A stretch of DNA of 63,169 bases, filler included, from Octopus bimaculoides (Eukaryota), in assembly GCF_001194135.2 (NCBI RefSeq). It is 4 parts of 4 records of this genome, joined end to end, with 100 filler letters (N's around TTAATTAATTAA, not from the genome) between each part and the next. Parts side by side here need not be neighbours in the genome. Positions count along the whole stretch, not along the records: positions 52,089 to 63,169 come from NC_068990.1; 3 more parts are not named here. The stretch is one strand, 5' to 3'. The position numbers and the translations under genes were made by a program. Shown piece by piece: positions 51,701 to 63,169 of the stretch (position 1 is the stretch's first letter; the number at the start of each line of letters is the position of its first letter). The notes under the pieces were generated by a model. The model did no database searches and was not told the DNA's origin. It saw only the letters and a program-made list of their open reading frames with translations.

Positions 51701-52101
51701 GCTACGATACCATATTTCTACATTAATAACTATCCAATCCATGCCAGCATGGAACATAGACATTAAGTGGAATGCCAGTCTCTCATCTAGGAGGGCCTTG
51801 AAATCAATGTTACCAACTGGGGACTATGTGTGCCGAAGTGATAATAAAAAGACCCAAAGGAGGTCTGCAACGAAATAATTTTACTCAACACTTTGCAAGT
51901 GAATCAGTGGAGGCAAAGATGTGTCTCATTTACTTGACAATTTATGCACCACATTGCAGAAATCACAATGTAAGTATATCTGAAAGGGNNNNNNNNNNNN
52001 NNNNNNNNNNNNNNNNNNNNNNNNNNNNNNNNTTAATTAATTAANNNNNNNNNNNNNNNNNNNNNNNNNNNNNNNNNNNNNNNNNNNNTATATATGCGTG
52101 C

Positions 52102-52146
<45 letters not shown>

Positions 52147-52154
52147 CCCATCTG

Positions 52155-52215
<61 letters not shown>

Positions 52216-55138
52216 ATATCTATCTATCGATCTATCATTTTAGCCATAGGTAGAACCATATTGGAGAAACATCCATGATTAAATACTTTGCTTTCTTTCC
52301 TCCTCCATGTTAGGATTGCATTGCGTCCACATCTCACATTCTTTATAAGATAATAAGGTTTGAATTGAAGGGGATTTGTCACTAATTCATACAAGTTAAC
52401 GTGTATTGGCATTTCCAGCCATGGACCATCTTATGGTTCAGAATGTAAGCTTTGAAGCATTTGTCAATTATTAGTAAAGATGGTTTTCAGTTTTCTGAGA
52501 GAAAGCCGACAGCAAAATAGAACAGTTTATGTGTTTATTTGTTATTATGTTTCTCGTCAGAATGCTTAATGATTATACCTTCATTCTCTTATTCTTTTAC
52601 TTGATTTATCTCTAGAGCTGCGGCCATTCTGGAATATGGCAATAAATATTACACCAGTTGCAAAATAAGGTGGATCGTAATTACATACTCCCGGAATTAA
52701 GCTAAGAATGAAGAGCGTGACGAACAGGAAATCATTACTGTGGCAGCGCAACATTTTAGAAATTGCAGGCAAAACTCTCTAACTTAAAAACATTAACCCC
52801 CTTCAAAATGTGAAAGGACACACTGGATAATAAAGTCCTGGGGACGGTTTGATCAAACACGCTCCTCATTACCATTTTGCATTGTTCAGCGCGAACAAGA
52901 ACAAGCGTCTCTAAATCTGGTGAAAAATAAGAAAATAGACAGAAATATTACTAAAGATAAATGGCATGGGTGCTTCATAAGACATCTATATATATATGAT
53001 GGATTCTCCTGTAGAAAACGACGCATGAGCATCCAGATTTTGCCGAACGACAAGCACAAATGATTTGTTTATAGTGATCAAATGTATGTGCCATACATTA
53101 GCTCACACCTTCCATCAAATCAATCGACGTTCCTGAACATGTTAACACGCCGGGCAAAATGCCTAGCGGTATTTCGTCTGTCTTTACTTTTAGGGTTCAA
53201 ATTCCGTCATGGGTGACCTAACCCTTCATCCTTTCAGAGTCAATGAAATAAAAAGTAACTGAGCAACTGGGATCGACTTATTCCCATCCGCACAGACCAT
53301 GTGGGGCCAAAATTTGAAAGCAATATTTAAGAACATGCGATCCAATTGCTTCAAACGTCGAAACATGACTTTTGTAGATGCAGCACGTCAATGAGCAGTG
53401 TGTAAAATTTCATCACCCTTGCCATAAATACACCTGGAAAGCAAGTCCCCTTCGTGAAATTTCCACAGGATCATTCGTATATTAAAACAGTCTCTCCTGA
53501 ATCACTTCTCTTTTCTTTCTTAGGCAGAATAATCATCACTTCTGTCCCATATTCCTTTCCCTCTTCCTCAATGAAAATGGCAATTTGGTTACAATCCTTG
53601 TATCGCTGAATCTTATATATTCGGTCATATCTAAATACTTTCGCTGGGGTCACAAAAGCTGTCATTCAAACATCGATAATACAACAGATAGCGTTCCAAT
53701 TATCTATATCATATCACGGAACTATACTTTTATATAATATAGTCAACTTCATTTCCTATACTTCAAGGATTGTCTTCAATGAAGTAAAGAAGAACATTGT
53801 TCGGAGAGACTTCAACCAACAACCTCATGGAAGTTCGCAATAACACTCATAGAATCTATTTGTACATGTCCTGTATTTCGATCAGTCTCACGACTTTGAT
53901 AATTTCTCCTCAGAATTTTAAATTGTTGACAATTTATACGTCCATTCATAAACAGAAATGACGCATACGTTACAGCTGCCACTCCGGAAGGCATGACCAA
54001 GCTGTTTCCATTTTCTAGTTCGTTTTACCATTTATCGATCTTAACCCTGTCGCTTTCACATTCCAGGAAGATTTTGTCTTATTCAAACCTACGCAGATAC
54101 ACAACTATTACATCCATATATCACCTATTTGCTGTGGTGCTGTGACCACACACCTCTTATAAAAACCATTTTCCTCAACTTATGCTCTCCCCCATTCGTA
54201 AGTTTGTGGGGATGTATGCGCCCACGTGCCAGTGGCGTTCGTTTGAAACTCTCTGTCTTGTTTCTGTCTATTTCTGTCGCACGTACACTTTTACCACACC
54301 CTTTCTATAAATTGATAGATGTTTTACACTACAGGAATCTATCGTTATCACTTCAATATAATAAATATACTTTTCAGGTTTTGTGACACAATGTGTCACA
54401 TAAACGTTTAATATTTGCCGTGAAATCAAACTTTCAAGAGTAAACAATGATATAAGCATAATGTTTTTGAGCACCATGAAACACTCCTGCGATTCTAACT
54501 ATTATAGAATTCTTATGCTTTTGTTTCCCAAAGATATATCTAGCAATCAGATTCGACAGCATGTCCCTCTTCGTCACATTGTTATGATCTTTTGACTTTT
54601 ATCGTTTACTTGTTTCAGTCATTAGATTGCGGCCTTACTGGGGCATGGCCTCGAAGAATTTTGAGTCGAAAAAAGCGNNNNNNNNNNNNNNNNNNNNNNN
54701 NNNNNNNNNNNNNNNNNNNNNNNNNNNNNNNNNNNNNNNNNNNNNNNNNNNNNNNNNNNNNNNNNNNNNNNNNNNNNNNNNNNNNNNNNNNNNNNNNNNN
54801 NNNNNNNNNNNNNAGTACTTATTCGTGTAAAGCCCACTACTTATTATGTTTGTCTATTTTGTCGGACCGATAAATTAGGAAGGCGTAAACACAAAGGCCG
54901 TCTCACAAATTACGCATTCCACGCGATATCTCATCATCCGTTAGTCCCCTTCTCGCGGCGGAGATCGGGACTGACAAGGATTCTGATGGACGGGTCACAT
55001 GAAGGACCCAGGGATATACCGAAAATAGTGAATGCAGTAACGTGCTGCAAAGAAGCATGACCTCATACTTGACCTGACCGATTATGACAGCATAGAGGAC
55101 TTGTTGCCATACAGTGGTCAAGGTAAATAAATACAGTA

Positions 55139-55425
55139 CAGTAACCACGCGCCATAAAGCGGTTCACGTATCGCGAATCACTTATCGCGATTCATTTATC
55201 GCGGTTCACTTATCACGGTTCACTTATCGCGGTTCACTTATCGTGGTTCACTTATGTCGATTCCTTTATGGTGTTGTTTTGCATTTATAATAGAATAAGT
55301 ATATATAAATTATAAAAAATAATAATATTAAAAATATACAGTACAGTGCTGTTTCTACTTCGCAGATTTTCACTATCGTGGCGGGGTTTCGGAACGTAAC
55401 ACCCGCGATAGTCGAGACAGTACTG
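55139..55425 (-). mobile_element. Tigger-type MITE, copy 2, with internal 14-bp tandem array
   Basis: TA on both sides and CAGTA termini. Seven copies of gcggttcacttatc at 55159-55256. Confidence 0.75.
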
Positions 55426-55822
55426 TATATAATACTATGGTCACATAATTTTCGTAGTCATACAGTTTGTCAATATGTTGGATAACAACAGAATCAGGAA
55501 CGATATTCACATAAAAATTCTTCCATGCTACCATTTATATATAATTTTTTTTTATTAATATTTAAACTCTTCTTCGTGTGTAACATTTTCGAAATTCACT
55601 GTCTTGATATTTCGGTTGATTAAACGAATGTAACGTACATATCACTGTTAATTTTAACATGAGATAATGGATAACTATTTTCGACTTTGTTCTATCAGAT
55701 AGGGATTTTTATATAATATCACTACATGGTATTATTCATAGGTTAATTTACTTCAAGTTGTATGCACACACAGACACACACAGAGATACACGCGCGCGCA
55801 CACACACACATAGATAGATGTA

Positions 55823-55859
<37 letters not shown>

Positions 55860-55890
55860 TTGCATACATATATATGTACATATATATGTG

Positions 55891-55922
<32 letters not shown>

Positions 55923-57121
55923 TNNNNNNNNNNNNNNNNNNNNNNNNNNNNNNNNNNNNNNNNNNNNNNNNNNNNNNNNNNNNNNNNNNNNNNNNNNNNN
56001 NNNNNNNNNNNNNNNNNNNNNNNNNNNNNNNNNNNNNNNNNNNNNNNNNNNNNNNNNNNNNNNNNNNNNNNNNNNNNNNNNNNNNNNNNNNNNNNNNNNN
56101 NNNNNNNNNNNNNNNNNNNNNNNNNNNNNNNNNNNNNNNNNNNNNNNNNNNNNNNNNNNNNNNNNNNNNNNNNNNNNNNNNNNNNNNNNNNNNNNNNNNN
56201 NNNNNNNNNNNNNNNNNNNNNNNNNNNNNNNNNNNNNNNNNNNNNNNNNNNNNNNNNNNNNNNNNNNNNNNNNNNNNNNNNNNNNNNNNNNNNNNNNNNN
56301 NNNNNNNNNNNNNNNNNNNNNNNNNNNNNNNNNNNNNNNNNNNNNNNNNNNNNNNNNNNNNNNNNNNNNNNNNNNNNNNNNNNNNNNNNNNNNNNNNNNN
56401 NNNNNNNNNNNNNNNNNNNNNNNNNNNNNNNNNNNNNNNNNNNNNNNNNNNNNNNNNNNNNNNNNNNNNNNNNNNNNNNNNNNNNNNNNNNNNNNNNNNN
56501 NNNNNNNNNNNNNNNNNNNNNNNNNNNNNNNNNNNNNNNNNNNNNNNNNNNNNNNNNNNNNNNNNNNNNNNNNNNNNNNNNNNNNNNNNNNNNNNNNNNN
56601 NNNNNNNNNNNNNNNNNNNNNNNNNNNNNNNNNNNNNNNNNTATATATATATGTGTGTGTCTATCTATATATATATATATACATGCACACACACAAACAC
56701 ACACATATATATATATACATCTCTATACAAACCGTTGCTGATTAAACAGGAGCGATAAATTGCAGGAGTCAATAGGAATATTAATTGTGCTTTGATACAT
56801 TTTAATTGAAACGGTCCAACTTCTAGTACTCAGCTGTTATTAGTTTCTAATCAACAACTGGTAAAGCAAACCTGCTTTGATATATATATGTGTAAATTTA
56901 TAGACATATTAAGTTAATGAAGTTGCAGAATCGTTAGTGCACGGGGAAAAATGGTAAGCTGCATTTTACCCGTTTTCACCTTCCGAGATCGATGTTGCCT
57001 TTCATAAATTCGGGGTTAATAAAATGAACCCTCGCTGATCACTGTTGTCTATGTAATCGGCTTAACTCTCCACCGAATTTGCTGACCTTGTGCCAAAACT
57101 TGGATCTCAATTAATAAACAC

Positions 57122-57189
<68 letters not shown>

Positions 57190-57195
57190 GAGGTT

Positions 57196-57496
57196 CACTC
57201 CGTCGGTTACGACGACGAGAGTTCCACTTGGTACAACCAAAGTAACAGCTTGCTCGTGAAATTAACGTGCAAGTGGCTGAGCACTCCACAGACACGTGTA
57301 CAACGTATTTCTCAATGAGATTCAGCATGACAGTTTGACGACGCTGACCCTTTGAAATACAGGTACAACTCATTTTTGTCAGCTGAGTGGACTGGGGCAA
57401 CGTGAGATAATGTGTCTTGCTCAAGGACACAACGCGTCGCTGGGAATAGGACGATCGTGACCCGAATGTCCTAACCACTAAACTACGCACCTTCAC
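57196..57496 (-). mobile_element. SINE B-related variant. Relatives at 12276-12460 (+), 22788-23072 (+), 27980-28292 (-), 31519-31838 (-) and 42225-42350 (+).
   Basis: B-type tRNA head followed by ttgtgtccttgagcaagacac-like body. Several relatives share the family B tail. Confidence 0.75.
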
Positions 57497-57603
57497 ACAT
57501 ACACGCACATATGTAAGTATGTATATATGTATGTACATTTATACATACACACCGACTTCTATGCGTACATATATTACACATATATAACTTATTGGTATTA
57601 TAG

Positions 57604-57963
57604 TTGCAATGGCCCAGTGGTTAGGGCAGCAGCCTCGCGGCCGTAGGATCGCGGTTTCGACTCCCAGATCGGGCGTTGTGAGTGTTTATTGAGCAAAAAC
57701 GCCTAAAGCCCCACGAGGTTCCGGCAGGGAGTGGTGGCGAACCCTGCTATAATCTTTTATCACAACTTTCTGTCACACTCTCTTCCTGTATTTCAAAGGG
57801 CCAGCCTTGTCACATTCTGTGTCACACTGAATATCCCGGAGAACTACGTTAAAGGTACACGTGTCTGTGGAACGCTCAGCCACTTGCACGTTAATTTCAC
57901 GAGCAGGTTGTTCTGTTGATCGGATCAACTGGAACCCTCGTCGTCGTAACCGACGGAGTGCCA
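57604..57963 (+). mobile_element. SINE family B
   Basis: Head gcaatggcccagtggttaggg; tail ...cgacggagtgcca. Confidence 0.88.
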
Positions 57964-59163
57964 CGATAATATATTGGTGGTGAAACAAATTTTGATTTTG
58001 CTGTAATAGCCTGACAATATTTTAGCCCCAATCCAGAAATGTTTACACACTTTCACCCCACGCAGAGAGTGGGAGGGAGAGAGAGAGGGAACGCGAAAGA
58101 CAGGGAGAGAGNNNNNNNNNNNNNNNNNNNNNNNNNNNNNNNNNNNNNNNNNNNNNNNNNNNNNNNNNNNNNNNNNNNNNNNNNNNNNNNNNNNNNNNNN
58201 NNNNNNNNNNNNNNNNNNNNNNNNNNNNNNNNNNNNNNNNNNNNNNNNNNNNNNNNNNNNNNNNNNNNNNNNNNNNNNNNNNNNNNNNNNNNNNNNNNNN
58301 NNNNNNNNNNNNNNNNNNNNNNNNNNNNNNNNNNNNNNNNNNNNNNNNNNNNNNNNNNNNNNNNNNNNNNNNNNNNNNNNNNNNNNNNNNNNNNNNNNNN
58401 NNNNNNNNNNNNNNNNNNNNNNNNNNNNNNNNNNNNNNNNNNNNNNNNNNNNNNNNNNNNNNNNNNNNNNNNNNNNNNNNNNNNNNNNNNNNNNNNNNNN
58501 NNNNNNNNNNNNNNNNNNNNNNNNNNNNNNNNNNNNNNNNNNNNNNNNNNNNNNNNNNNNNNNNNNNNNNNNNNNNNNNNNNNNNNNNNNNNNNNNNNNN
58601 NNNNNNNNNNNNNNNNNNNNNNNNNNNNNNNNNNNNNNNNNNNNNNNNNNNNNNNNNNNNNNNNNNNNNNNNNNNNNNNNNNNNNNNNNNNNNNNNNNNN
58701 NNNNNNNNNNNNNNNNNNNNNNNNNNNNNNNNNNNNNNNNNNNNNNNNNNNNNNNNNNNNNNNNNNNNNNNNNNNNNNNNNNNNNNNNNNNNNNNNNNNN
58801 NNNNNNNNNNNNATATATATATATATACATATACATATGTATGTATATATGCGGATGTATAGGTGTATACAGGTGCATATATATAATACTGTAATATGGT
58901 ATTGATATGCAGGCAGTCATAGTTAAGAAAGACTCTATGCTGGACTTAAGTGAAATGAATATATAATTTAAATCAAGTCGAAGTGACAGTGGTGAATTAG
59001 TCTTGACTATAGTTTCATGTAGCGAATTTTCCAGCAATCGACACACAGGCGCACACACGCAGACCCACTCACAAAAACACACATATACATATCTATTCAT
59101 ACATATATACATACATACATACATACATACATACATACGCACATATACCCATATATATATATG

Positions 59164-59200
<37 letters not shown>

Positions 59201-60202
59201 NNNNNNNNNNNNNNNNNNNNNNNNNNNNNNNNNNNNNNNNNNNNNNNNNNNNNNNNNNNNNNNNNNNNNNNNNNNNNNNNNNNNNNNNNNNNNNNNNNNN
59301 NNNNNNNNNNNNNNNNNNNNNNNNNNNNNNNNNNNNNNNNNNNNNNNNNNNNNNNNNNNNNNNNNNNNNNNNNNNNNNNNNNNNNNNNNNNNNNNNNNNN
59401 NNNNNNNNNNNNNNNNNNNNNNNNNNNNNNNNNNNNNNNNNNNNNNNNNNNNNNNNNNNNNNNNNNNNNNNNNNNNNNNNNNNNNNNNNNNNNNNNNNNN
59501 NNNNNNNNNNNNNNNNNNNNNNNNNNNNNNNNNNNNNNNNNNNNNNNNNNNNNNNNNNNNNNNNNNNNNNNNNNNNNNNNNNNNNNNNNNNNNNNNNNNN
59601 NNNNNNNNNNNNNNNNNNNNNNNNNNNNNNNNNNNNNNNNNNNNNNNNNNNNNNNNNNNNNNNNNNNNNNNNNNNNNNNNNNNNNNNNNNNNNNNNNNNN
59701 NNNNNNNNNNNNNNNNNNNNNNNNNNNNNNNNNNNNNNNNNNNNNNNNNNNNNNNNNNNNNNNNNNNNNNNNNNNNNNNNNNNNNNNNNNNNNNNNNNNN
59801 NNNNNNNNNNNNNNNNNNNNNNNNNNNNNNNNNNNNNNNNNNNNNNNNNNNNNNNNNNNNNNNNNNNNNNNNNNNNNNNNNNNNNNNNNNNNNNNNNNNN
59901 NNNNNNNNNNNNNNNNNNNNNNNNNNNNNNNNNNNNNNNNNNNNNNNNNNNNNNNNNNNNNNNNNNNNNNNNNNNNNNNNNNNNNNNNNNNNNNNNNNNN
60001 NNNNNNNNNNNNNNNNNNNNNNNNNNNNNNNNNNNNNNNNNNNNNNNNNNNNNNNNNNNNNNNNNNNNNNNNNNNNNNNNNNNNNNNNNNNNNNNNNNNN
60101 NNNNNNNNNNNNNNNNNNNNNNNNNNNNNNNNNNNNNNNNNNNNNNNNNNNNNNNNNNNNNNNNNNNNNNNNNNNNNNNNNNNNNNNNNNNNNNNNNNNN
60201 GA

Positions 60203-60460
60203 TATCAGTGAAGAATTTCACTTGAAAAGAAGATATAAGGTTTGCCAGGTTTTTGTCTCTCTCACCAAGGTCATCAGCTGTCGAACGCCGACGAAGGGAA
60301 ATAACCCTGAAATCCGGATACGTTCGTGCTGCTGGTCGAGTTGAGAGGGATAACTCCCTTGGCAAACAGGACACAGTCGTGTGACGATAAGCCAGCTGGA
60401 AGAGATGTCCTCCTGGGGCTAAAAGCAACAGTAACATCCACCCCTAGGGGTCAGCCACAC
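60203..60460 (+). mobile_element. Hammerhead-containing non-coding repeat, copy 1 (5' end cut by gap)
   Basis: Colinear with the reverse complement of 60840-61110: upstream hairpin, ribozyme, then AACTCCC, AGGAYACAG, GTGTGWCG..AGCCAGCTG and CCTGGGGCTAAA blocks. Confidence 0.7.
60282..60326 (+). ncRNA. Minimal type I hammerhead ribozyme with CCGACGA (U4C) core
   Basis: CGAACG-CCGACGA-AGGG(aaataa)CCCT-GAAA-TCCGGA-TA/CGTTCG. Perfect 6-bp stem I, 4-bp stem II, palindromic stem III. Predicted cleavage after 60320. Confidence 0.75.
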
Positions 60461-60503
60461 TTAAGTGGCAATATACTACACTTTATATATATATACACAT
60501 ATA

Positions 60504-60535
<32 letters not shown>

Positions 60536-60839
60536 CTGACACATATATTATTGTGTTTGGCATACACAAATATGTCTGTGTACGTGTATATGTATGCATG
60601 TAGTTTTAAGGAGAGATATCCAAAACACTAAATTTAAACAGTTAACATTGATTTGCATGATGATGATATCCTTGGGTTTTCACATAATGTAATAAGTCCC
60701 ATATGATATATAAGTATTATATGTCCGATTATCCCATTTCAAGCTGACCGTATTATTTCCTTACCCAGCACAAACGTTTCTATCATTATTACGGAAAACA
60801 GAATGAACTAAAGTAAAGTTTATTTCCCAACCGAATGTG

Positions 60840-61110
60840 GCAGTCTCTGTTGAGACGATTGCTACTCTTGTTTAGCCCCAGGCAACATCGTCTGCAGCTG
60901 GCTATACGACACACAACCTGTATCCTTATATTTTAGAACAGGGGAGTTTAGTACCCCCACCCAGCACAAAGCTCTATCTGTGGATCGCACGGTTTCAGGG
61001 TTATTTCCCTTCGTCGGCACGGAATAACTCTTTAGCTGAGATGGCGCTGCTAAATCGCTGTTCGAAAATATATATAATTTTCTAAGTGACACACTGTCAC
61101 TGATCTAATG
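60840..61110 (-). mobile_element. Hammerhead-containing non-coding repeat, copy 2
   Basis: Same block order as copy 1, inverted, about 380 bp away. Confidence 0.7.
60977..61023 (-). ncRNA. Second copy of the CCGACGA hammerhead, with stem III mismatch
   Basis: Minus strand reads TCCGTG-CCGACGA-AGGG(aaataa)CCCT-GAAA-CCGTGCGA-TC/CACAGA. Core and stem II are identical to the 60282 copy. Stem I is a different sequence that still pairs at 5 of 6 positions. Confidence 0.65.
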
Positions 61111-62614
61111 AATAAAAATATTATTGTTCCTAAATCTATCTCTCAACGAGAGATGTTCAGCACCAGTACATTAAAGTGAAGGTATAGACAGCTCTTGGGG
61201 ATAAACAGCAGTAGCATTCGTCCTAACATGGACTGCCATATTAGATTGGCAAATAACCCTTACCTTAAAGTACTCCTACTGAATATCTCTCGTTGAGAGA
61301 TTTAAGAACAAGAATGAAACACTTGTGGGGAATATCCCCATCTACAGTCATCTCTACGTAAATACATACATAAGTGCATACATACATAAATAAATACATA
61401 CACACACACACATGAATATATATACATACATACATATATATATATATAGACACACACACACCTATATGCACACACACATGCGTACATTTATACATACGCT
61501 CACACGCACATACATACAAACACACATATATTTAATATATTTAAAGTAATATCGAAGATTTTGTCAGAGAGAATGACATTTAACAAGGCTACCAATCATC
61601 TTACTGACACATTATATAAAATGGTTGGAACTTTAAGATCAGTTTCTCACCTAATTATGAGCAATGTTTCCTGAGACATAGGAAACTGAATAGAAGTTTG
61701 AAATTAATAGACATTTAAAATCAATCTTTTATTTAAACATATGATATTGCCAGAAAATTCTTATTCGTGTTTAATAGATTTTTTTTAGTTTGACTTAAGT
61801 AAAACTCCATTAATGAACATAAATAGTGTGTTACTTCTCATTTCGTGTAAAACGAAGTTTAGAAACAAATAATTCAGGTAACGTGTCTCACTAAATATAT
61901 AATTATACACTAAGAGAGTAACGGCTATTTACCAGCAAATTTAGAACCATAAACGTCATGTACAAAGCTTGAGGTATATATGTGCTATATACACCGAAAG
62001 AAAGTCTTAATTTGGTATGCGTAAAACGAGTGGCAAAAGTAGTGCAGTATGACTTTGAAATATACTTTAATCCAGAGAGATTCAATTTTCCCTGTCTGAA
62101 GCTGAAGTCTGTCTTCAAGAAAGAAAAATGGAAGCGACACAAATGAGACCGATCCTGTGACCTATGTCTATTGAAGAACAGTGTCTTGCTATTTTCCGGA
62201 CCATATGGTCTGTAGTTGAGAGCAAAATGATAAATGGGAAGACAACCAAATAATATAACGTTTACACTACTGAGAATGGTCGTATCCTCACGAAAACTAC
62301 AGACAATTTGGTTCCCAAATCAAAACTAATATCGAAGTGCTACCGCGAGAACGATTTCTTTTTTGAGAGAAATTATGAAAGTGACCTTGAATAAAGGCTA
62401 ACATTAAGGAAGGCTTGAAAGTGTAACATGTTTGGAATTTTGCAACTAGCTATCCGTTAGGACCGACGAATATGTTGGAAGACACGTTACACGAGGATAG
62501 CTGTTGGGAATGAAAACTTAATTATGAAATAATTAAATTTATAAATTACAACTAATAATTTTAAAAGAAATAATAATGGATGTTGTTAATAATCTTTTTA
62601 ACTACAAGCACAGG

Positions 62615-62975
62615 ACCTGATTATTTTTTCGGGGTGGGGATAGTCGATTACATCGACTCCAGTGCATGACTGGTACTCTTTCCATCGTCTCCAAAAGGAT
62701 GAAAAGCAAAGTCGACTTCGGCGGAATTTGAACTCGTAACGTAAAAACGGACGAAATACCGCTAAGCATTTCGCTCGGCGTGCTAACGATGTTGTTAATA
62801 ATGATAATAATACAGTTGATAAAAGGCAGCGAGCTGGCAGAAATGTTTAGCGGTATTTCGTCTGTCGCGACGTTCTGAGTTCAAATTCCGCCGAGGTCGA
62901 CTTTGCCTTTCATCCTTTCGGAGTCGATTAAATAAATATTTTTTATGAGCTGGGCTCGATATAATCGACTTAATC
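62615..62975. mobile_element. Head-to-head pair of SINE C copies (- 62615-62790, + 62822-62975)
   Basis: Both halves match family C in opposite orientation. Confidence 0.85.
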
Positions 62976-63169
62976 CGTTTGTCTGTCCTTGTTTGTCCCC
63001 TCTGTGTGTAGCTCCTTATGTTTAGAATATAACGATAACATACAATGAAACCTTAAAATGTCAATCGATTTGTTGTCGTCTGTAGAAGTGACTTTGTTCA
63101 TAATACCGGATATCTATATATGTCTTATTAACGCTAATTATGATATTGAGCGACAGGATTAAAGTCTAA

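What the first reader, a model, noticed from the sequence alone, without database searches (positions are those of the whole stretch)
60203..61110. Non-coding repeat family built around a hammerhead ribozyme with a CCGACGA core
Seen: two inverted, diverged copies of a ~300-bp element, each with a type I hammerhead fold. Their cores and stem II are identical, while stems I and III differ in sequence yet mostly still pair (CGAACG/CGTTCG vs TCCGTG/CACAGA), which looks like selection on structure. Both read CCGACGA rather than CUGANGA. CpG decay would turn CCGA into CTGA, not the reverse, so C4 is probably the family state. Established: minimal type I hammerheads with palindromic stem III occur in Penelope-like elements and retrozymes and cleave as dimers. 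Inference: this is a non-autonomous, ribozyme-processed retroelement family (retrozyme or SINE-like) with a non-canonical catalytic core. I do not recognise it from cephalopods, but novelty needs a literature and database check.
Basis: partly seen in the sequence, partly recalled or inferred. Interest (0 to 1): 0.85.

Follow-up and report, generated by a model that had tools for sequence, protein, structure and literature searches.

The report
Hammerhead-ribozyme repeat with C4 core
Two old, inverted copies of a ~300-bp non-coding repeat each carry a self-cleaving "hammerhead" RNA motif of the kind that animal retrotransposons use, but with one unusual core base, and whether it still cuts or how many copies the genome holds could not be tested here.

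Summary
Copy A (+, 60202 to about 60485, 5' end lost in an assembly gap) and copy B (-, 61110 to about 60806) are homologous at about 58-63% identity. Their only long identical block is 26 nt, GCCGACGAAGGGAAATAACCCTGAAA. It runs exactly from the last helix I pair through core, helix II, loop 2 and GAAA (2 of 100,000 permutations).

The motif has the architecture of metazoan type I hammerheads: 6-bp helix I, 4-bp helix II and a short palindromic helix III that implies dimer action. A covariance model built only from four experimentally active coral, mussel and axolotl retrozyme hammerheads ranks A first in the piece (17.4 bits, E about 0.002) and B third (12.4 bits). Rfam's own models find nothing.

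Helix I extends to about 50-nt arms that pair within each copy but not across copies.

Both copies deviate from consensus at U4 (C) and at G10.1-C11.1 (A-U). U4C has a viroid precedent with much reduced in vitro activity.

No animal genome was reachable, so copy number, family consensus, tandem source loci and cleavage remain untested.

Verdict: probably a hammerhead-bearing retrozyme or Penelope-like-element-derived repeat, a new member of a known kind. A functional variant core is unproven.

The parts
60202..60485 (+). Copy A of the repeat. Its 5' end is cut by the assembly gap 59201-60200 and its 3' end runs into a (TA)n microsatellite.
60205..60225 (+). Small 5' hairpin (CAGTGA...TCACTTG). 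Its counterpart in copy B is at 61085-61104 (-).
   Evidence: A 5' region vs B 5' region, score 36, 0 of 200 shuffles
60240..60287 (+). 5' arm of the extended helix I in copy A. Its last 6 nt, CGAACG 60282-60287, form the canonical helix I.
   Evidence: 39 inter-arm pairs, z=-7.5
60288..60294 (+). Hammerhead core box CCGACGA (C3 C4 G5 A6 C7 G8 A9). C4 replaces the consensus U4.
60295..60308 (+). Helix II AGGG/CCCT (A10.1-U11.1 instead of G-C) with 6-nt loop 2 AAATAA.
60309..60320 (+). G12 A13 A14, the palindromic helix III AUCCGGAU (60312-60319) and H17 = A60320. Predicted cleavage lies between 60320 and 60321.
   Evidence: the 8-bp intermolecular helix III in the dimer MFE
60321..60367 (+). 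3' arm of the extended helix I in copy A. Its first 6 nt are CGTTCG.
60371..60485 (+). 3' domain of copy A. It holds the conserved blocks AGCCAGCTG and CCTGGGGCTAAA and two terminal hairpins shared with B and the C fragment.
60806..61110 (-). Copy B of the repeat, more decayed than A.
60977..61023 (-). Hammerhead motif of copy B: UCCGUG / CCGACGA / AGGG-AAAUAA-CCCU / GAA / ACCGUGCGAU / C / CACAGA. Predicted cut is after C60983.
   Evidence: 12.4 bits, E about 0.05
60936..61063 (-). Long hairpin of copy B (arms 61063-61018 and 60982-60936) with the hammerhead at its apex.
   Evidence: 37 inter-arm pairs, z=-4.7; cross-copy arms do not pair
61186..61265 (+). Fragment C: only the 3' tail of the family, 79% identical to B's tail. 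It lies inside a foldback at 61120-61315.

Best explanation
These are dead genomic copies of a roughly 300-bp non-coding, hammerhead-bearing retroelement. It is of the type known in animals as non-LTR retrozymes, or as the ribozyme-bearing terminal module of Penelope-like elements (PLEs).

Shown:
- Each copy carries, at the apex of a roughly 50-bp extended helix I, a type I hammerhead with the canonical metazoan layout: 6-bp helix I, 4-bp helix II with an A-rich 6-nt loop, GAAA-Y...R-U-H, and a short palindromic helix III.
- The hammerhead's invariant region is the one block that stayed identical while the rest of the element diverged to about 50-60% identity.
- The helix I arms changed sequence but kept pairing.

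Inferred:
- In transcripts of source loci that contain two or more units, two motifs pair through the palindromic helix III (AUCCGGAU in A) into a double hammerhead. This cuts after H17 (A60320 in copy A).
- Cleavage releases unit-length RNA with 5'-OH and 2',3'-cyclic phosphate ends. A host tRNA ligase can circularise this RNA and a PLE-type reverse transcriptase can copy it back into DNA.
- The monomer is predicted to be held in an inactive fold, in which C3-C4-G5 pair with the CGG of loop 3.

The common ancestor of A and B already had C4 and A10.1-U11.1. The ribozyme of this lineage is therefore probably slow, and it may be inactive.
For: - Architecture and coordinates come from direct reading.
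- A relaxed descriptor hits only these two sites. Shuffles give 0.013 sites per piece.
- The 26-nt identical block spans exactly position 2.1 through A15.1 (2 of 100,000 permutations). U16.1 and a non-G H17 are kept beyond it.
- A covariance model was built solely from four hammerheads that cleave in vitro: coral Amil224, mussel Mg353, axolotl Ax353 and Ax330. Their sequences are from Supplementary Table 2 of PMC7229834. It ranks A first (17.4 bits, E about 0.0016, full length) and B third (12.4 bits, E about 0.053) in the piece with filters off.
- Those four ribozymes have the same layout, including 6-10-nt palindromic helix III segments such as ACGCGCGU in mussel.
- RNAcofold of two A molecules gives the double hammerhead as the MFE: -49.9 against 2 x -22.5 kcal/mol.
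- The extended helix I arms give 39 pairs (z=-7.5) in A and 37 pairs (z=-4.7) in B. Cross-copy arm combinations fall to shuffle level.
- In A the sense strand folds better than the antisense, -56.9 against -47.5, with 6 against 2 G.U pairs.
- Whole copy A has a fold z-score of -3.7.
- There are no ORFs or Pfam domains.
- Unit size is at least 280-300 bp and GC is 45-48%, as described for animal retrozymes (PMC7229834).
- Dual hammerheads 100-700 bp apart on opposite strands are described for PLE remnants (PMC4209133). Here the two predicted cut sites are 663 bp apart.
- Monomeric derivatives dispersed through genomes are described in 10.64898/2026.07.22.740005.
Against: - Only two copies and one fragment could be examined. 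No animal genome, transcriptome or repeat library was reachable.
- Rfam 15 hammerhead models give no match, even at E<=10 on a 65-nt stretch.
- Two of the best-conserved hammerhead features are not met: U4 is C, and G10.1-C11.1 is A-U. U4C considerably lowers activity in vitro (PMC3088659).
- No tandem arrangement is visible.
- No reverse transcriptase or endonuclease remnant lies in the piece.
- Copy B's motif does not fold as a hammerhead by MFE, and its 6-bp helix I is no better than 12% of shuffles.
- At genome scale a one-mismatch descriptor is expected to hit many times by chance. The case therefore rests on the conservation pattern, not on the motif match alone.
Confidence: 0.55

Rival explanations
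1. Hammerhead-derived but catalytically dead. The lineage descends from a CUGANGA retrozyme or PLE hammerhead, and the master that gave rise to A and B had already lost cleavage through U4C and A10.1-U11.1. The hairpin and its apex were then kept for another RNA-level role, for example recognition by the reverse transcriptase, or stability or packaging of the transcript.
For: - U4 and the 10.1-11.1 G-C pair are among the most conserved hammerhead positions, and U4C considerably reduces activity in vitro (PMC3088659).
- Animal PLE mini-hammerheads cleave poorly in vitro even with consensus cores (PMC4209133).
- C4 stabilises an inactive monomer fold by about 2 kcal/mol and halves the predicted dimer advantage.
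- Rfam models do not score the motif.
Against: - The conserved block ends exactly where hammerhead constraints end, and A15.1, U16.1 and a non-G H17 are kept in both copies. This is hard to explain if catalysis had been irrelevant for the whole divergence.
- A natural U4C viroid hammerhead still supports infectivity.
- An active axolotl retrozyme hammerhead has a U.U at 10.1-11.1.
Confidence: 0.22
2. Not a ribozyme at all. The element is a foldback or MITE-like DNA repeat whose internal inverted repeat carries a conserved apical loop. On this reading the hammerhead resemblance (10 of 11 core positions) is a chance match found because many sequences were read.
For: - The relaxed descriptor would hit by chance roughly once per 0.6 Mb (0.013 per 8.5 kb), so chance matches exist genome-wide and among repeat consensi.
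- Inverted-repeat or foldback structures are common in this piece: 57196-57960 and 61120-61315.
- Arms that match within a copy but differ between subfamilies are also expected for terminal inverted repeats.
- There is no Rfam hit.
Against: - The hairpin is internal to a longer homologous unit, not at its termini.
- Features that were not imposed by the search also match animal hammerheads: 6-bp and 4-bp helices, the GAAAY/RUH rule, a palindromic helix III, and conservation boundaries that coincide with the core.
- The independent covariance model places both sites full length.
- Copy A shows a G.U excess on the sense strand.
Confidence: 0.13
3. Same ribozyme, different carrier. A, B and C are not a separate non-autonomous family. 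They are 5'-truncated tails or pseudo-LTR pieces of an autonomous Penelope-like element, inserted in the complex tandem and inverted fashion typical of PLEs.
For: - PLE hammerheads sit in the pseudo-LTRs near the 3' end. Most genomic motifs are single and derive from truncated PLEs, and pairs on opposite strands 100-700 bp apart are described (PMC4209133).
- An inverted 5'-truncated copy next to the upstream end, and insertion into (TA)n, are described for PLEs (PMC8557442).
- Here C is a short tail fragment lying head-to-head with B, A ends in (TA)n, and all three share the 3' end.
Against: - No RT or GIY-YIG remnant is in the piece.
- PLE mini-hammerheads typically have a 6-8-bp helix II, an unpaired base after A9 and G10.1-C11.1. 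This motif instead has the 4-bp helix II layout of retrozyme hammerheads.
- A and B are too diverged (about 60% identity) to come from one insertion event.
Confidence: 0.3

Closest known systems
Metazoan non-LTR retrozymes with type I hammerheads (Cervera & de la Pena 2020, PMC7229834; coral, mussel, axolotl)
   Same: - Non-coding unit of about 300 bp with GC below 50%.
- Type I hammerhead with 6-bp helix I, 4-bp helix II, an A-rich loop 2 and a short palindromic helix III that implies action as a dimer.
- Helix I continues into a longer paired region.
- A model built from four such active ribozymes finds both copies.
   Different: - No tandem repeat is visible here. The copies are dispersed and inverted monomers, although copy A abuts an unsequenced gap.
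- The core is CCGANGA instead of CUGANGA.
- Position 10.1-11.1 is A-U instead of G-C.
- Expression and circular RNA are unknown.
Minimal hammerheads in pseudo-LTRs of Penelope-like elements (Cervera & de la Pena 2014, PMC4209133; Craig et al. 2021, PMC8557442)
   Same: - Palindromic 15.2-16.2 and loop 3, with dimer logic.
- Mostly solitary motifs from truncated elements.
- Pairs on opposite strands 100-700 bp apart.
- Inverted truncated copies, and microsatellite (TA)n at an insertion end.
   Different: - Helix II is 4 bp, not 6-8 bp.
- There is no unpaired base between A9 and 10.1, and no G10.1-C11.1.
- No RT/GIY-YIG ORF lies nearby.
Natural U4C hammerhead variant of a viroid (Ambros & Flores 1998, as cited in Perreault et al. 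2011, PMC3088659)
   Same: The same single core change, U4 to C. It shows that C4 can be tolerated in vivo.
   Different: - It is a sequence variant of one viroid's type III hammerhead, not the ancestral state of a genomic repeat lineage.
- Its activity was measured. Here nothing was measured.
Schistosome Sm-alpha SINE-like repeats and newt satellite 2 (classical animal hammerhead repeats; from my own knowledge and as cited)
   Same: A short non-coding interspersed or tandem repeat of about 330 bp with a type I hammerhead. The newt satellite 2 hammerhead acts as a dimer.
   Different: - Those have consensus cores and are recognised by Rfam Hammerhead_1. This one is not.
- No pol III promoter or tRNA-like part was found here.

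Membership tests
Hammerhead ribozyme, type I | Three helices around the core in the order I - CUGANGA - II - GAA - III - H17 - I', with helix I open | tested here: met
   Direct reading. The descriptor hits only at 60288 (+) and 61017 (-). Both give full-length alignment to model R1.
Hammerhead ribozyme, type I | Invariant core nucleotides C3 U4 G5 A6 G8 A9 G12 A13 A14 A15.1 U16.1, and H17 not G | tested here: not met
   10 of 11 are present in both copies. Position 4 is C in both (CCGACGA). H17 is A in copy A and C in copy B, both allowed.
Hammerhead ribozyme, type I | G10.1-C11.1 closing pair of helix II (the most conserved pair after A15.1-U16.1) | tested here: not met
   A10.1-U11.1 in both copies. 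Active natural exceptions exist, for example U.U in axolotl Ax353.
Hammerhead ribozyme, type I | Match to the curated Rfam hammerhead covariance models | tested here: not met
   No hammerhead family match at E<=10 in the 11-kb piece, in 909 nt, or in 65 nt around copy A.
Hammerhead ribozyme, type I | Match to a model of experimentally active animal retrozyme hammerheads | tested here: met
   Model R1 (4 sequences, 13 pairs): A scores 17.4 bits, E about 0.0016, rank 1. B scores 12.4 bits, E about 0.053, rank 3. E-values are rough and the model is small, so the support is moderate.
Hammerhead ribozyme, type I | Site-specific self-cleavage after H17 | not testable with these tools
   Needs in vitro transcription of monomer and dimer constructs.
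Non-LTR retrozyme | Head-to-tail tandem repeats of a 170-400-bp unit, each with one type I hammerhead | tested here: inconclusive
   No tandem copy is seen. Copy A starts at the edge of a 1000-N gap, so an adjacent unit cannot be excluded. Monomeric derivatives are described.
Non-LTR retrozyme | Non-coding unit of about 300 bp with GC below 50% | tested here: met
   At least 284 bp and about 305 bp. GC is 0.48 and 0.45. No ORF with a Pfam domain.
Non-LTR retrozyme | Expressed as linear and circular unit-length RNA | not testable with these tools
   No transcriptome data are reachable.
Penelope-like element (pseudo-LTR mini-hammerhead) | Hammerhead lies in the terminal repeat of an element encoding RT plus GIY-YIG endonuclease | tested here: not met
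   No such ORF or domain lies in the 11-kb piece. Absence from a gap-rich 11 kb does not exclude a distant autonomous partner.
Penelope-like element (pseudo-LTR mini-hammerhead) | Long helix II (6-8 bp), an unpaired base between A9 and 10.1, and G10.1-C11.1 | tested here: not met
   Helix II is 4 bp, and A60295 pairs with U60308.
Penelope-like element (pseudo-LTR mini-hammerhead) | Palindromic 15.2-16.2 and loop 3; solitary or oppositely oriented paired motifs | tested here: met
   AUCCGGAU in A. The two motifs lie on opposite strands with cut sites 663 bp apart.
SINE (pol III, tRNA/5S/7SL head) | Small-RNA-derived head with an internal promoter | tested here: not met
   ARAGORN finds no tRNA-like sequence. 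Rfam finds no small-RNA match in A or B.

The most novel reading that the evidence does not exclude
A and B sample an abundant, undescribed retrozyme/PLE-derived family of this (reportedly cephalopod) genome. On this reading its master copies keep a C4 (CCGANGA) hammerhead that is active in vivo as a dimer. C4 would be selected because it pairs with the palindromic loop 3 (CCG/CGG), locking monomeric or circular RNA in an uncleavable fold. Such a family is invisible to Rfam models and to CUGANGA descriptors, so censuses of animal hammerheads would be missing a class.
Probability: 0.2. Interest if true: 0.65.

Novelty: new member of a known kind. Interest (0 to 1): 0.4.

Why it matters
If the family is large and its C4 core cleaves, it would be the first genomic repeat lineage with a non-consensus U4 position as its ancestral state. 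That would show that standard searches (Rfam models, CUGANGA descriptors) under-count animal hammerheads. It would also give a natural test case for how tertiary or dimer context compensates for a weakened uridine turn.

If the core is dead, the element is still useful. It would be an example of a ribozyme module retained as a structural hairpin in a retroelement. Either way it adds a retrozyme or PLE-type element to a genome where none of this type has been described in the papers I could search.

Tried and rejected
1. Rfam 15 scans of the piece, of 909 nt and of 65 nt gave no hammerhead or other ribozyme family. The many mir-297/466/1277/3149 hits are (TA)n/(CA)n microsatellites far below gathering score.

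2. Pattern scans for the conserved block:
   - Metagenome contigs, viral contigs and prokaryote genome contigs gave 0 hits for the core-containing patterns.
   - Five metagenome hits to the bare 20-mer lack any CNGANGA box and are chance.

3. I tried to reach other genomic copies through spurious ORFs. A concatenated six-frame query against the 5.8-billion-protein set gave nothing at E<=10. Exact look-ups of the two window ORFs found nothing on record.

4. RNAalifold on the MAFFT alignment of the hairpin region was uninformative, because the sequence alignment is not structural. I replaced it with per-copy arm-pairing tests.

5. Apparent similarity between the sequences downstream of B and of C, which would have implied a tandem junction, was not significant: 741 and 612 of 1000 shuffles did as well. 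The idea was dropped.

6. The idea that an X-like terminal inverted repeat bounds copy B at 60608-60637 was dropped (E about 1.3).

7. Literature string searches for the motif sequence and for CCGANGA-type cores returned only unrelated primers and constructs.

8. The Ambros & Flores 1998 paper is not held, so the U4C precedent is cited second-hand from PMC3088659.

9. The covariation claim based on the 6-bp stem I of B alone was rejected as non-significant.
Full report
**Setting.** The piece 52089-63169 is a gap-rich draft sequence. N runs lie at 54678-54813, 55924-56641, 58112-58812 and 59201-60200. It is AT-rich (GC 0.365), full of (TA)n/(CA)n microsatellites, and has no convincing coding capacity. 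ORFs of 70 aa or more are microsatellite or gap read-throughs, or have no Pfam match. I could not verify the organism.

**The observation.**
- Copy A lies on the plus strand from 60202, which is the first base after a 1000-N gap, so its 5' end is unknown. It runs to about 60485, where it enters a (TA)n tract.
- Copy B lies on the minus strand from 61110 to about 60806.
- blastn aligns A and B at 63% identity over 294 columns (E=8e-15). MAFFT gives 58% identity over ungapped columns.
- A third, shorter fragment (C, about 61186-61265, plus strand) matches only the 3' tail of B, at 79% over 66 nt (E=2e-11).
- Both full copies read, in order:
  - a 6-nt helix I strand
  - CCGACGA
  - AGGG-AAATAA-CCCT
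  - GAA
  - a short segment that starts with A and ends with U
  - a non-G base
  - the helix I partner strand
- In A the motif is 60282-60326 with H17 = A60320. In B it is 61023-60977 with H17 = C60983.

**Is it more than chance?** Three tests address this.
1. A deliberately relaxed hammerhead descriptor was run on both strands. It allowed one mismatch in the 11 invariant positions, helix I of 6 bp with one mismatch, helix II of at least 3 bp, and free loop sizes. It finds only these two sites in the piece, and 300 shuffles give a mean of 0.013 sites. That rate still implies many chance hits in a gigabase genome, so the motif match alone is not decisive.
2. The alignment's longest identical run is 26 nt, GCCGACGAAGGGAAATAACCCTGAAA, against 49% identity elsewhere. 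Only 2 of 100,000 column permutations reach it. The run starts at the last helix I pair and ends at A15.1, which is the part of a hammerhead that cannot vary. Beyond it, U16.1 and a non-G H17 are kept while helices I and III differ.
3. I took the four retrozyme constructs that cleave in vitro from Supplementary Table 2 of Cervera & de la Pena 2020 (coral Amil224, mussel Mg353, axolotl Ax353 and Ax330). I aligned their hammerheads and built a covariance model with the textbook structure.
   - Searched over the piece with filters off, it ranks copy A first (17.4 bits, E about 0.0016, model positions 1-44, exactly 60282-60326).
   - It ranks copy B third (12.4 bits, E about 0.053, 60977-61023).
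   - The second hit is a 26-nt stub that deletes 25 model positions.
   - The model is small and its E-values are rough, but it is independent of the window.

Against all this, Rfam 15's own hammerhead models return nothing, even at E<=10 on 65 nt.

**Architecture.**
- Cervera & de la Pena 2014 describe the canonical animal type I hammerhead as helix I of 6 bp, helix II of 4 bp, and helix III of 1-2 bp capped by a small palindromic loop. That form is active as a dimer in tandem transcripts.
- The 2020 supplement gives the catalytic-centre rule CUGANGA / GAAAY / RUH.
- Copy A fits all of this except U4: 6 bp, 4 bp, GAAA-U...A-U-A, and AUCCGGAU (2 bp plus the palindromic tetraloop CCGG). The mussel ribozyme's ACGCGCGU is of the same style.
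- RNAcofold of two 61-nt A segments gives the double hammerhead, with an 8-bp intermolecular helix III, as the minimum-energy structure: -49.9 against 2 x -22.5 kcal/mol.
- The A monomer prefers an inactive fold in which C3-C4-G5 pair with the CGG of loop 3.
- Replacing C4 by U in silico weakens that inactive fold (-13.8 to -11.6). It raises the dimer advantage from -4.9 to -9.3 kcal/mol.
- Copy B's helix III (ACCGUGCGAU) has a C.A mismatch and central G.U pairs, and B does not fold as a hammerhead by MFE. B looks like the more decayed copy.

**Structure conservation.**
Given B's G/U-rich downstream sequence, 12% of shuffles offer an equally good helix I.
- The stronger signal is that helix I continues for about 50 nt on each side in both copies.
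  - In A the arms 60240-60287 and 60321-60367 form 39 pairs (z=-7.5).
  - In B the arms 61063-61018 and 60982-60936 form 37 pairs (z=-4.7).
  - No shuffle out of 500 does as well in either copy.
- A's 5' arm with B's 3' arm, and the reverse combination, fold no better than shuffles (-23.1 and -28.0 kcal/mol). The arms therefore changed sequence together.
- In A the sense strand is 9 kcal/mol more stable than the antisense and has 6 against 2 G.U pairs. In B there is no difference.
- The 3' domain shows two small hairpins shared by A, B and C, with a few compensatory pairs.
- This favours RNA-level constraint. With two or three sequences it is indicative, not proof.

**The core variant.**
- Both copies have C4 and A10.1-U11.1. 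Given their divergence, the simplest reading is that their common ancestor had both.
- The CpG-decay argument adds little, because the piece shows no CpG depletion (o/e 1.02).
- Perreault et al. 2011 note that core variants are rare. They report that a natural viroid U4C variant "considerably decreases activity in vitro" yet stays infectious, and that 10.1-11.1 is the most conserved pair after 15.1-16.1, with active U.U exceptions.
- C4 therefore has a precedent, and it predicts a slow ribozyme at best.

**What it is and how it would work.** The best reading is a hammerhead-bearing non-autonomous retroelement of the retrozyme/PLE-derived kind. Recent work argues that animal retrozymes descend from PLE pseudo-LTRs and leave many dispersed monomers. 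PLE remnants often occur as oppositely oriented hammerhead pairs 100-700 bp apart, with inverted 5'-truncated copies and microsatellite targets. Several local features fit that picture:
- The two predicted cut sites lie 663 bp apart on opposite strands.
- Fragment C lies head-to-head with B.
- Copy A ends in (TA)n.
- A, B and C share a 3' end.

Cleavage, circularisation and reverse transcription are inferred from the family, not shown. Whether the carrier is a separate ~300-bp family or the tail of an autonomous PLE cannot be decided here.

**Rivals.**
- A hammerhead-derived but dead motif kept as a structural hairpin.
- A chance resemblance at the apex of a foldback-type DNA repeat. Foldbacks are frequent in this piece.

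**Limits.** No animal genome, repeat library or transcriptome could be reached. Pattern scans, protein-space searches and exact look-ups all came back empty or with chance hits.

**Novelty.**
- Hammerheads in animal retroelements are well known, and 235 Hammerhead_1 hits were reported for the giant squid genome.
- I found no paper linking hammerheads to octopus repeats or describing a CCGANGA lineage, within the limits of the held library.
- I file this as a new member of a known kind. A 20% case remains that it is a functional variant-core family missed by standard searches.

Noticed in passing
window 61120-61315: A foldback with arms 61120-61185 and 61253-61315 (78% over 64 nt, E about 2e-10). 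Its loop and inner right arm carry the family's 3'-tail fragment C. It sits 10 nt from copy B's 5' end, head-to-head. It could be an insertion into a palindrome, a PLE-style inverted insertion, or a separate foldback element sharing the tail module.
   Followed up: partly
window 57196-57960: A second inverted-repeat structure: arms 57196-57301 / 57855-57960 (106 nt, 88%) and 57336-57363 / 57785-57812 (28 nt, 89%). The short ORFs across it have no Pfam match above threshold.
   Followed up: partly
window 53157-53252 and 62841-62936: A direct pair of a 96-nt repeat (78% identity) containing GGTTCAAATTCCG, which resembles a tRNA B-box region. It is possibly a tRNA-derived SINE. ARAGORN calls no tRNA there.
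   Followed up: no
window 55146-55283: A minisatellite of a CpG-rich 14-nt unit (consensus about CGCGGTTCACTTAT), roughly 9 units.
   Followed up: no
window 59201-60200: A gap of exactly 1000 N abuts the first base of copy A, and (CATA)n/(TA)n lies on its far side. The missing sequence could hide the element's 5' end or a tandem neighbour.
   Followed up: no
window 52089-63169: CpG observed/expected is 1.02 for the whole piece, so there is no sign of methylation-driven CpG loss. Copy A's 45-nt hammerhead holds 7 CpGs.
   Followed up: yes
window 60288-60290 with 60315-60317: C3-C4-G5 can pair with the CGG of the palindromic loop 3. C4 makes this inactive monomer fold 2.2 kcal/mol more stable than U4 would, which is a possible reason for the variant.
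   Followed up: partly
window 55800-59200, 60480-60600, 61400-61540: All Rfam microRNA-family matches (mir-297, mir-466, mir-1277, mir-3149 and others) fall on (TA)n/(CA)n microsatellites at 20-54 bits, against gathering scores of 75-100. They are low-complexity artefacts.
   Followed up: yes
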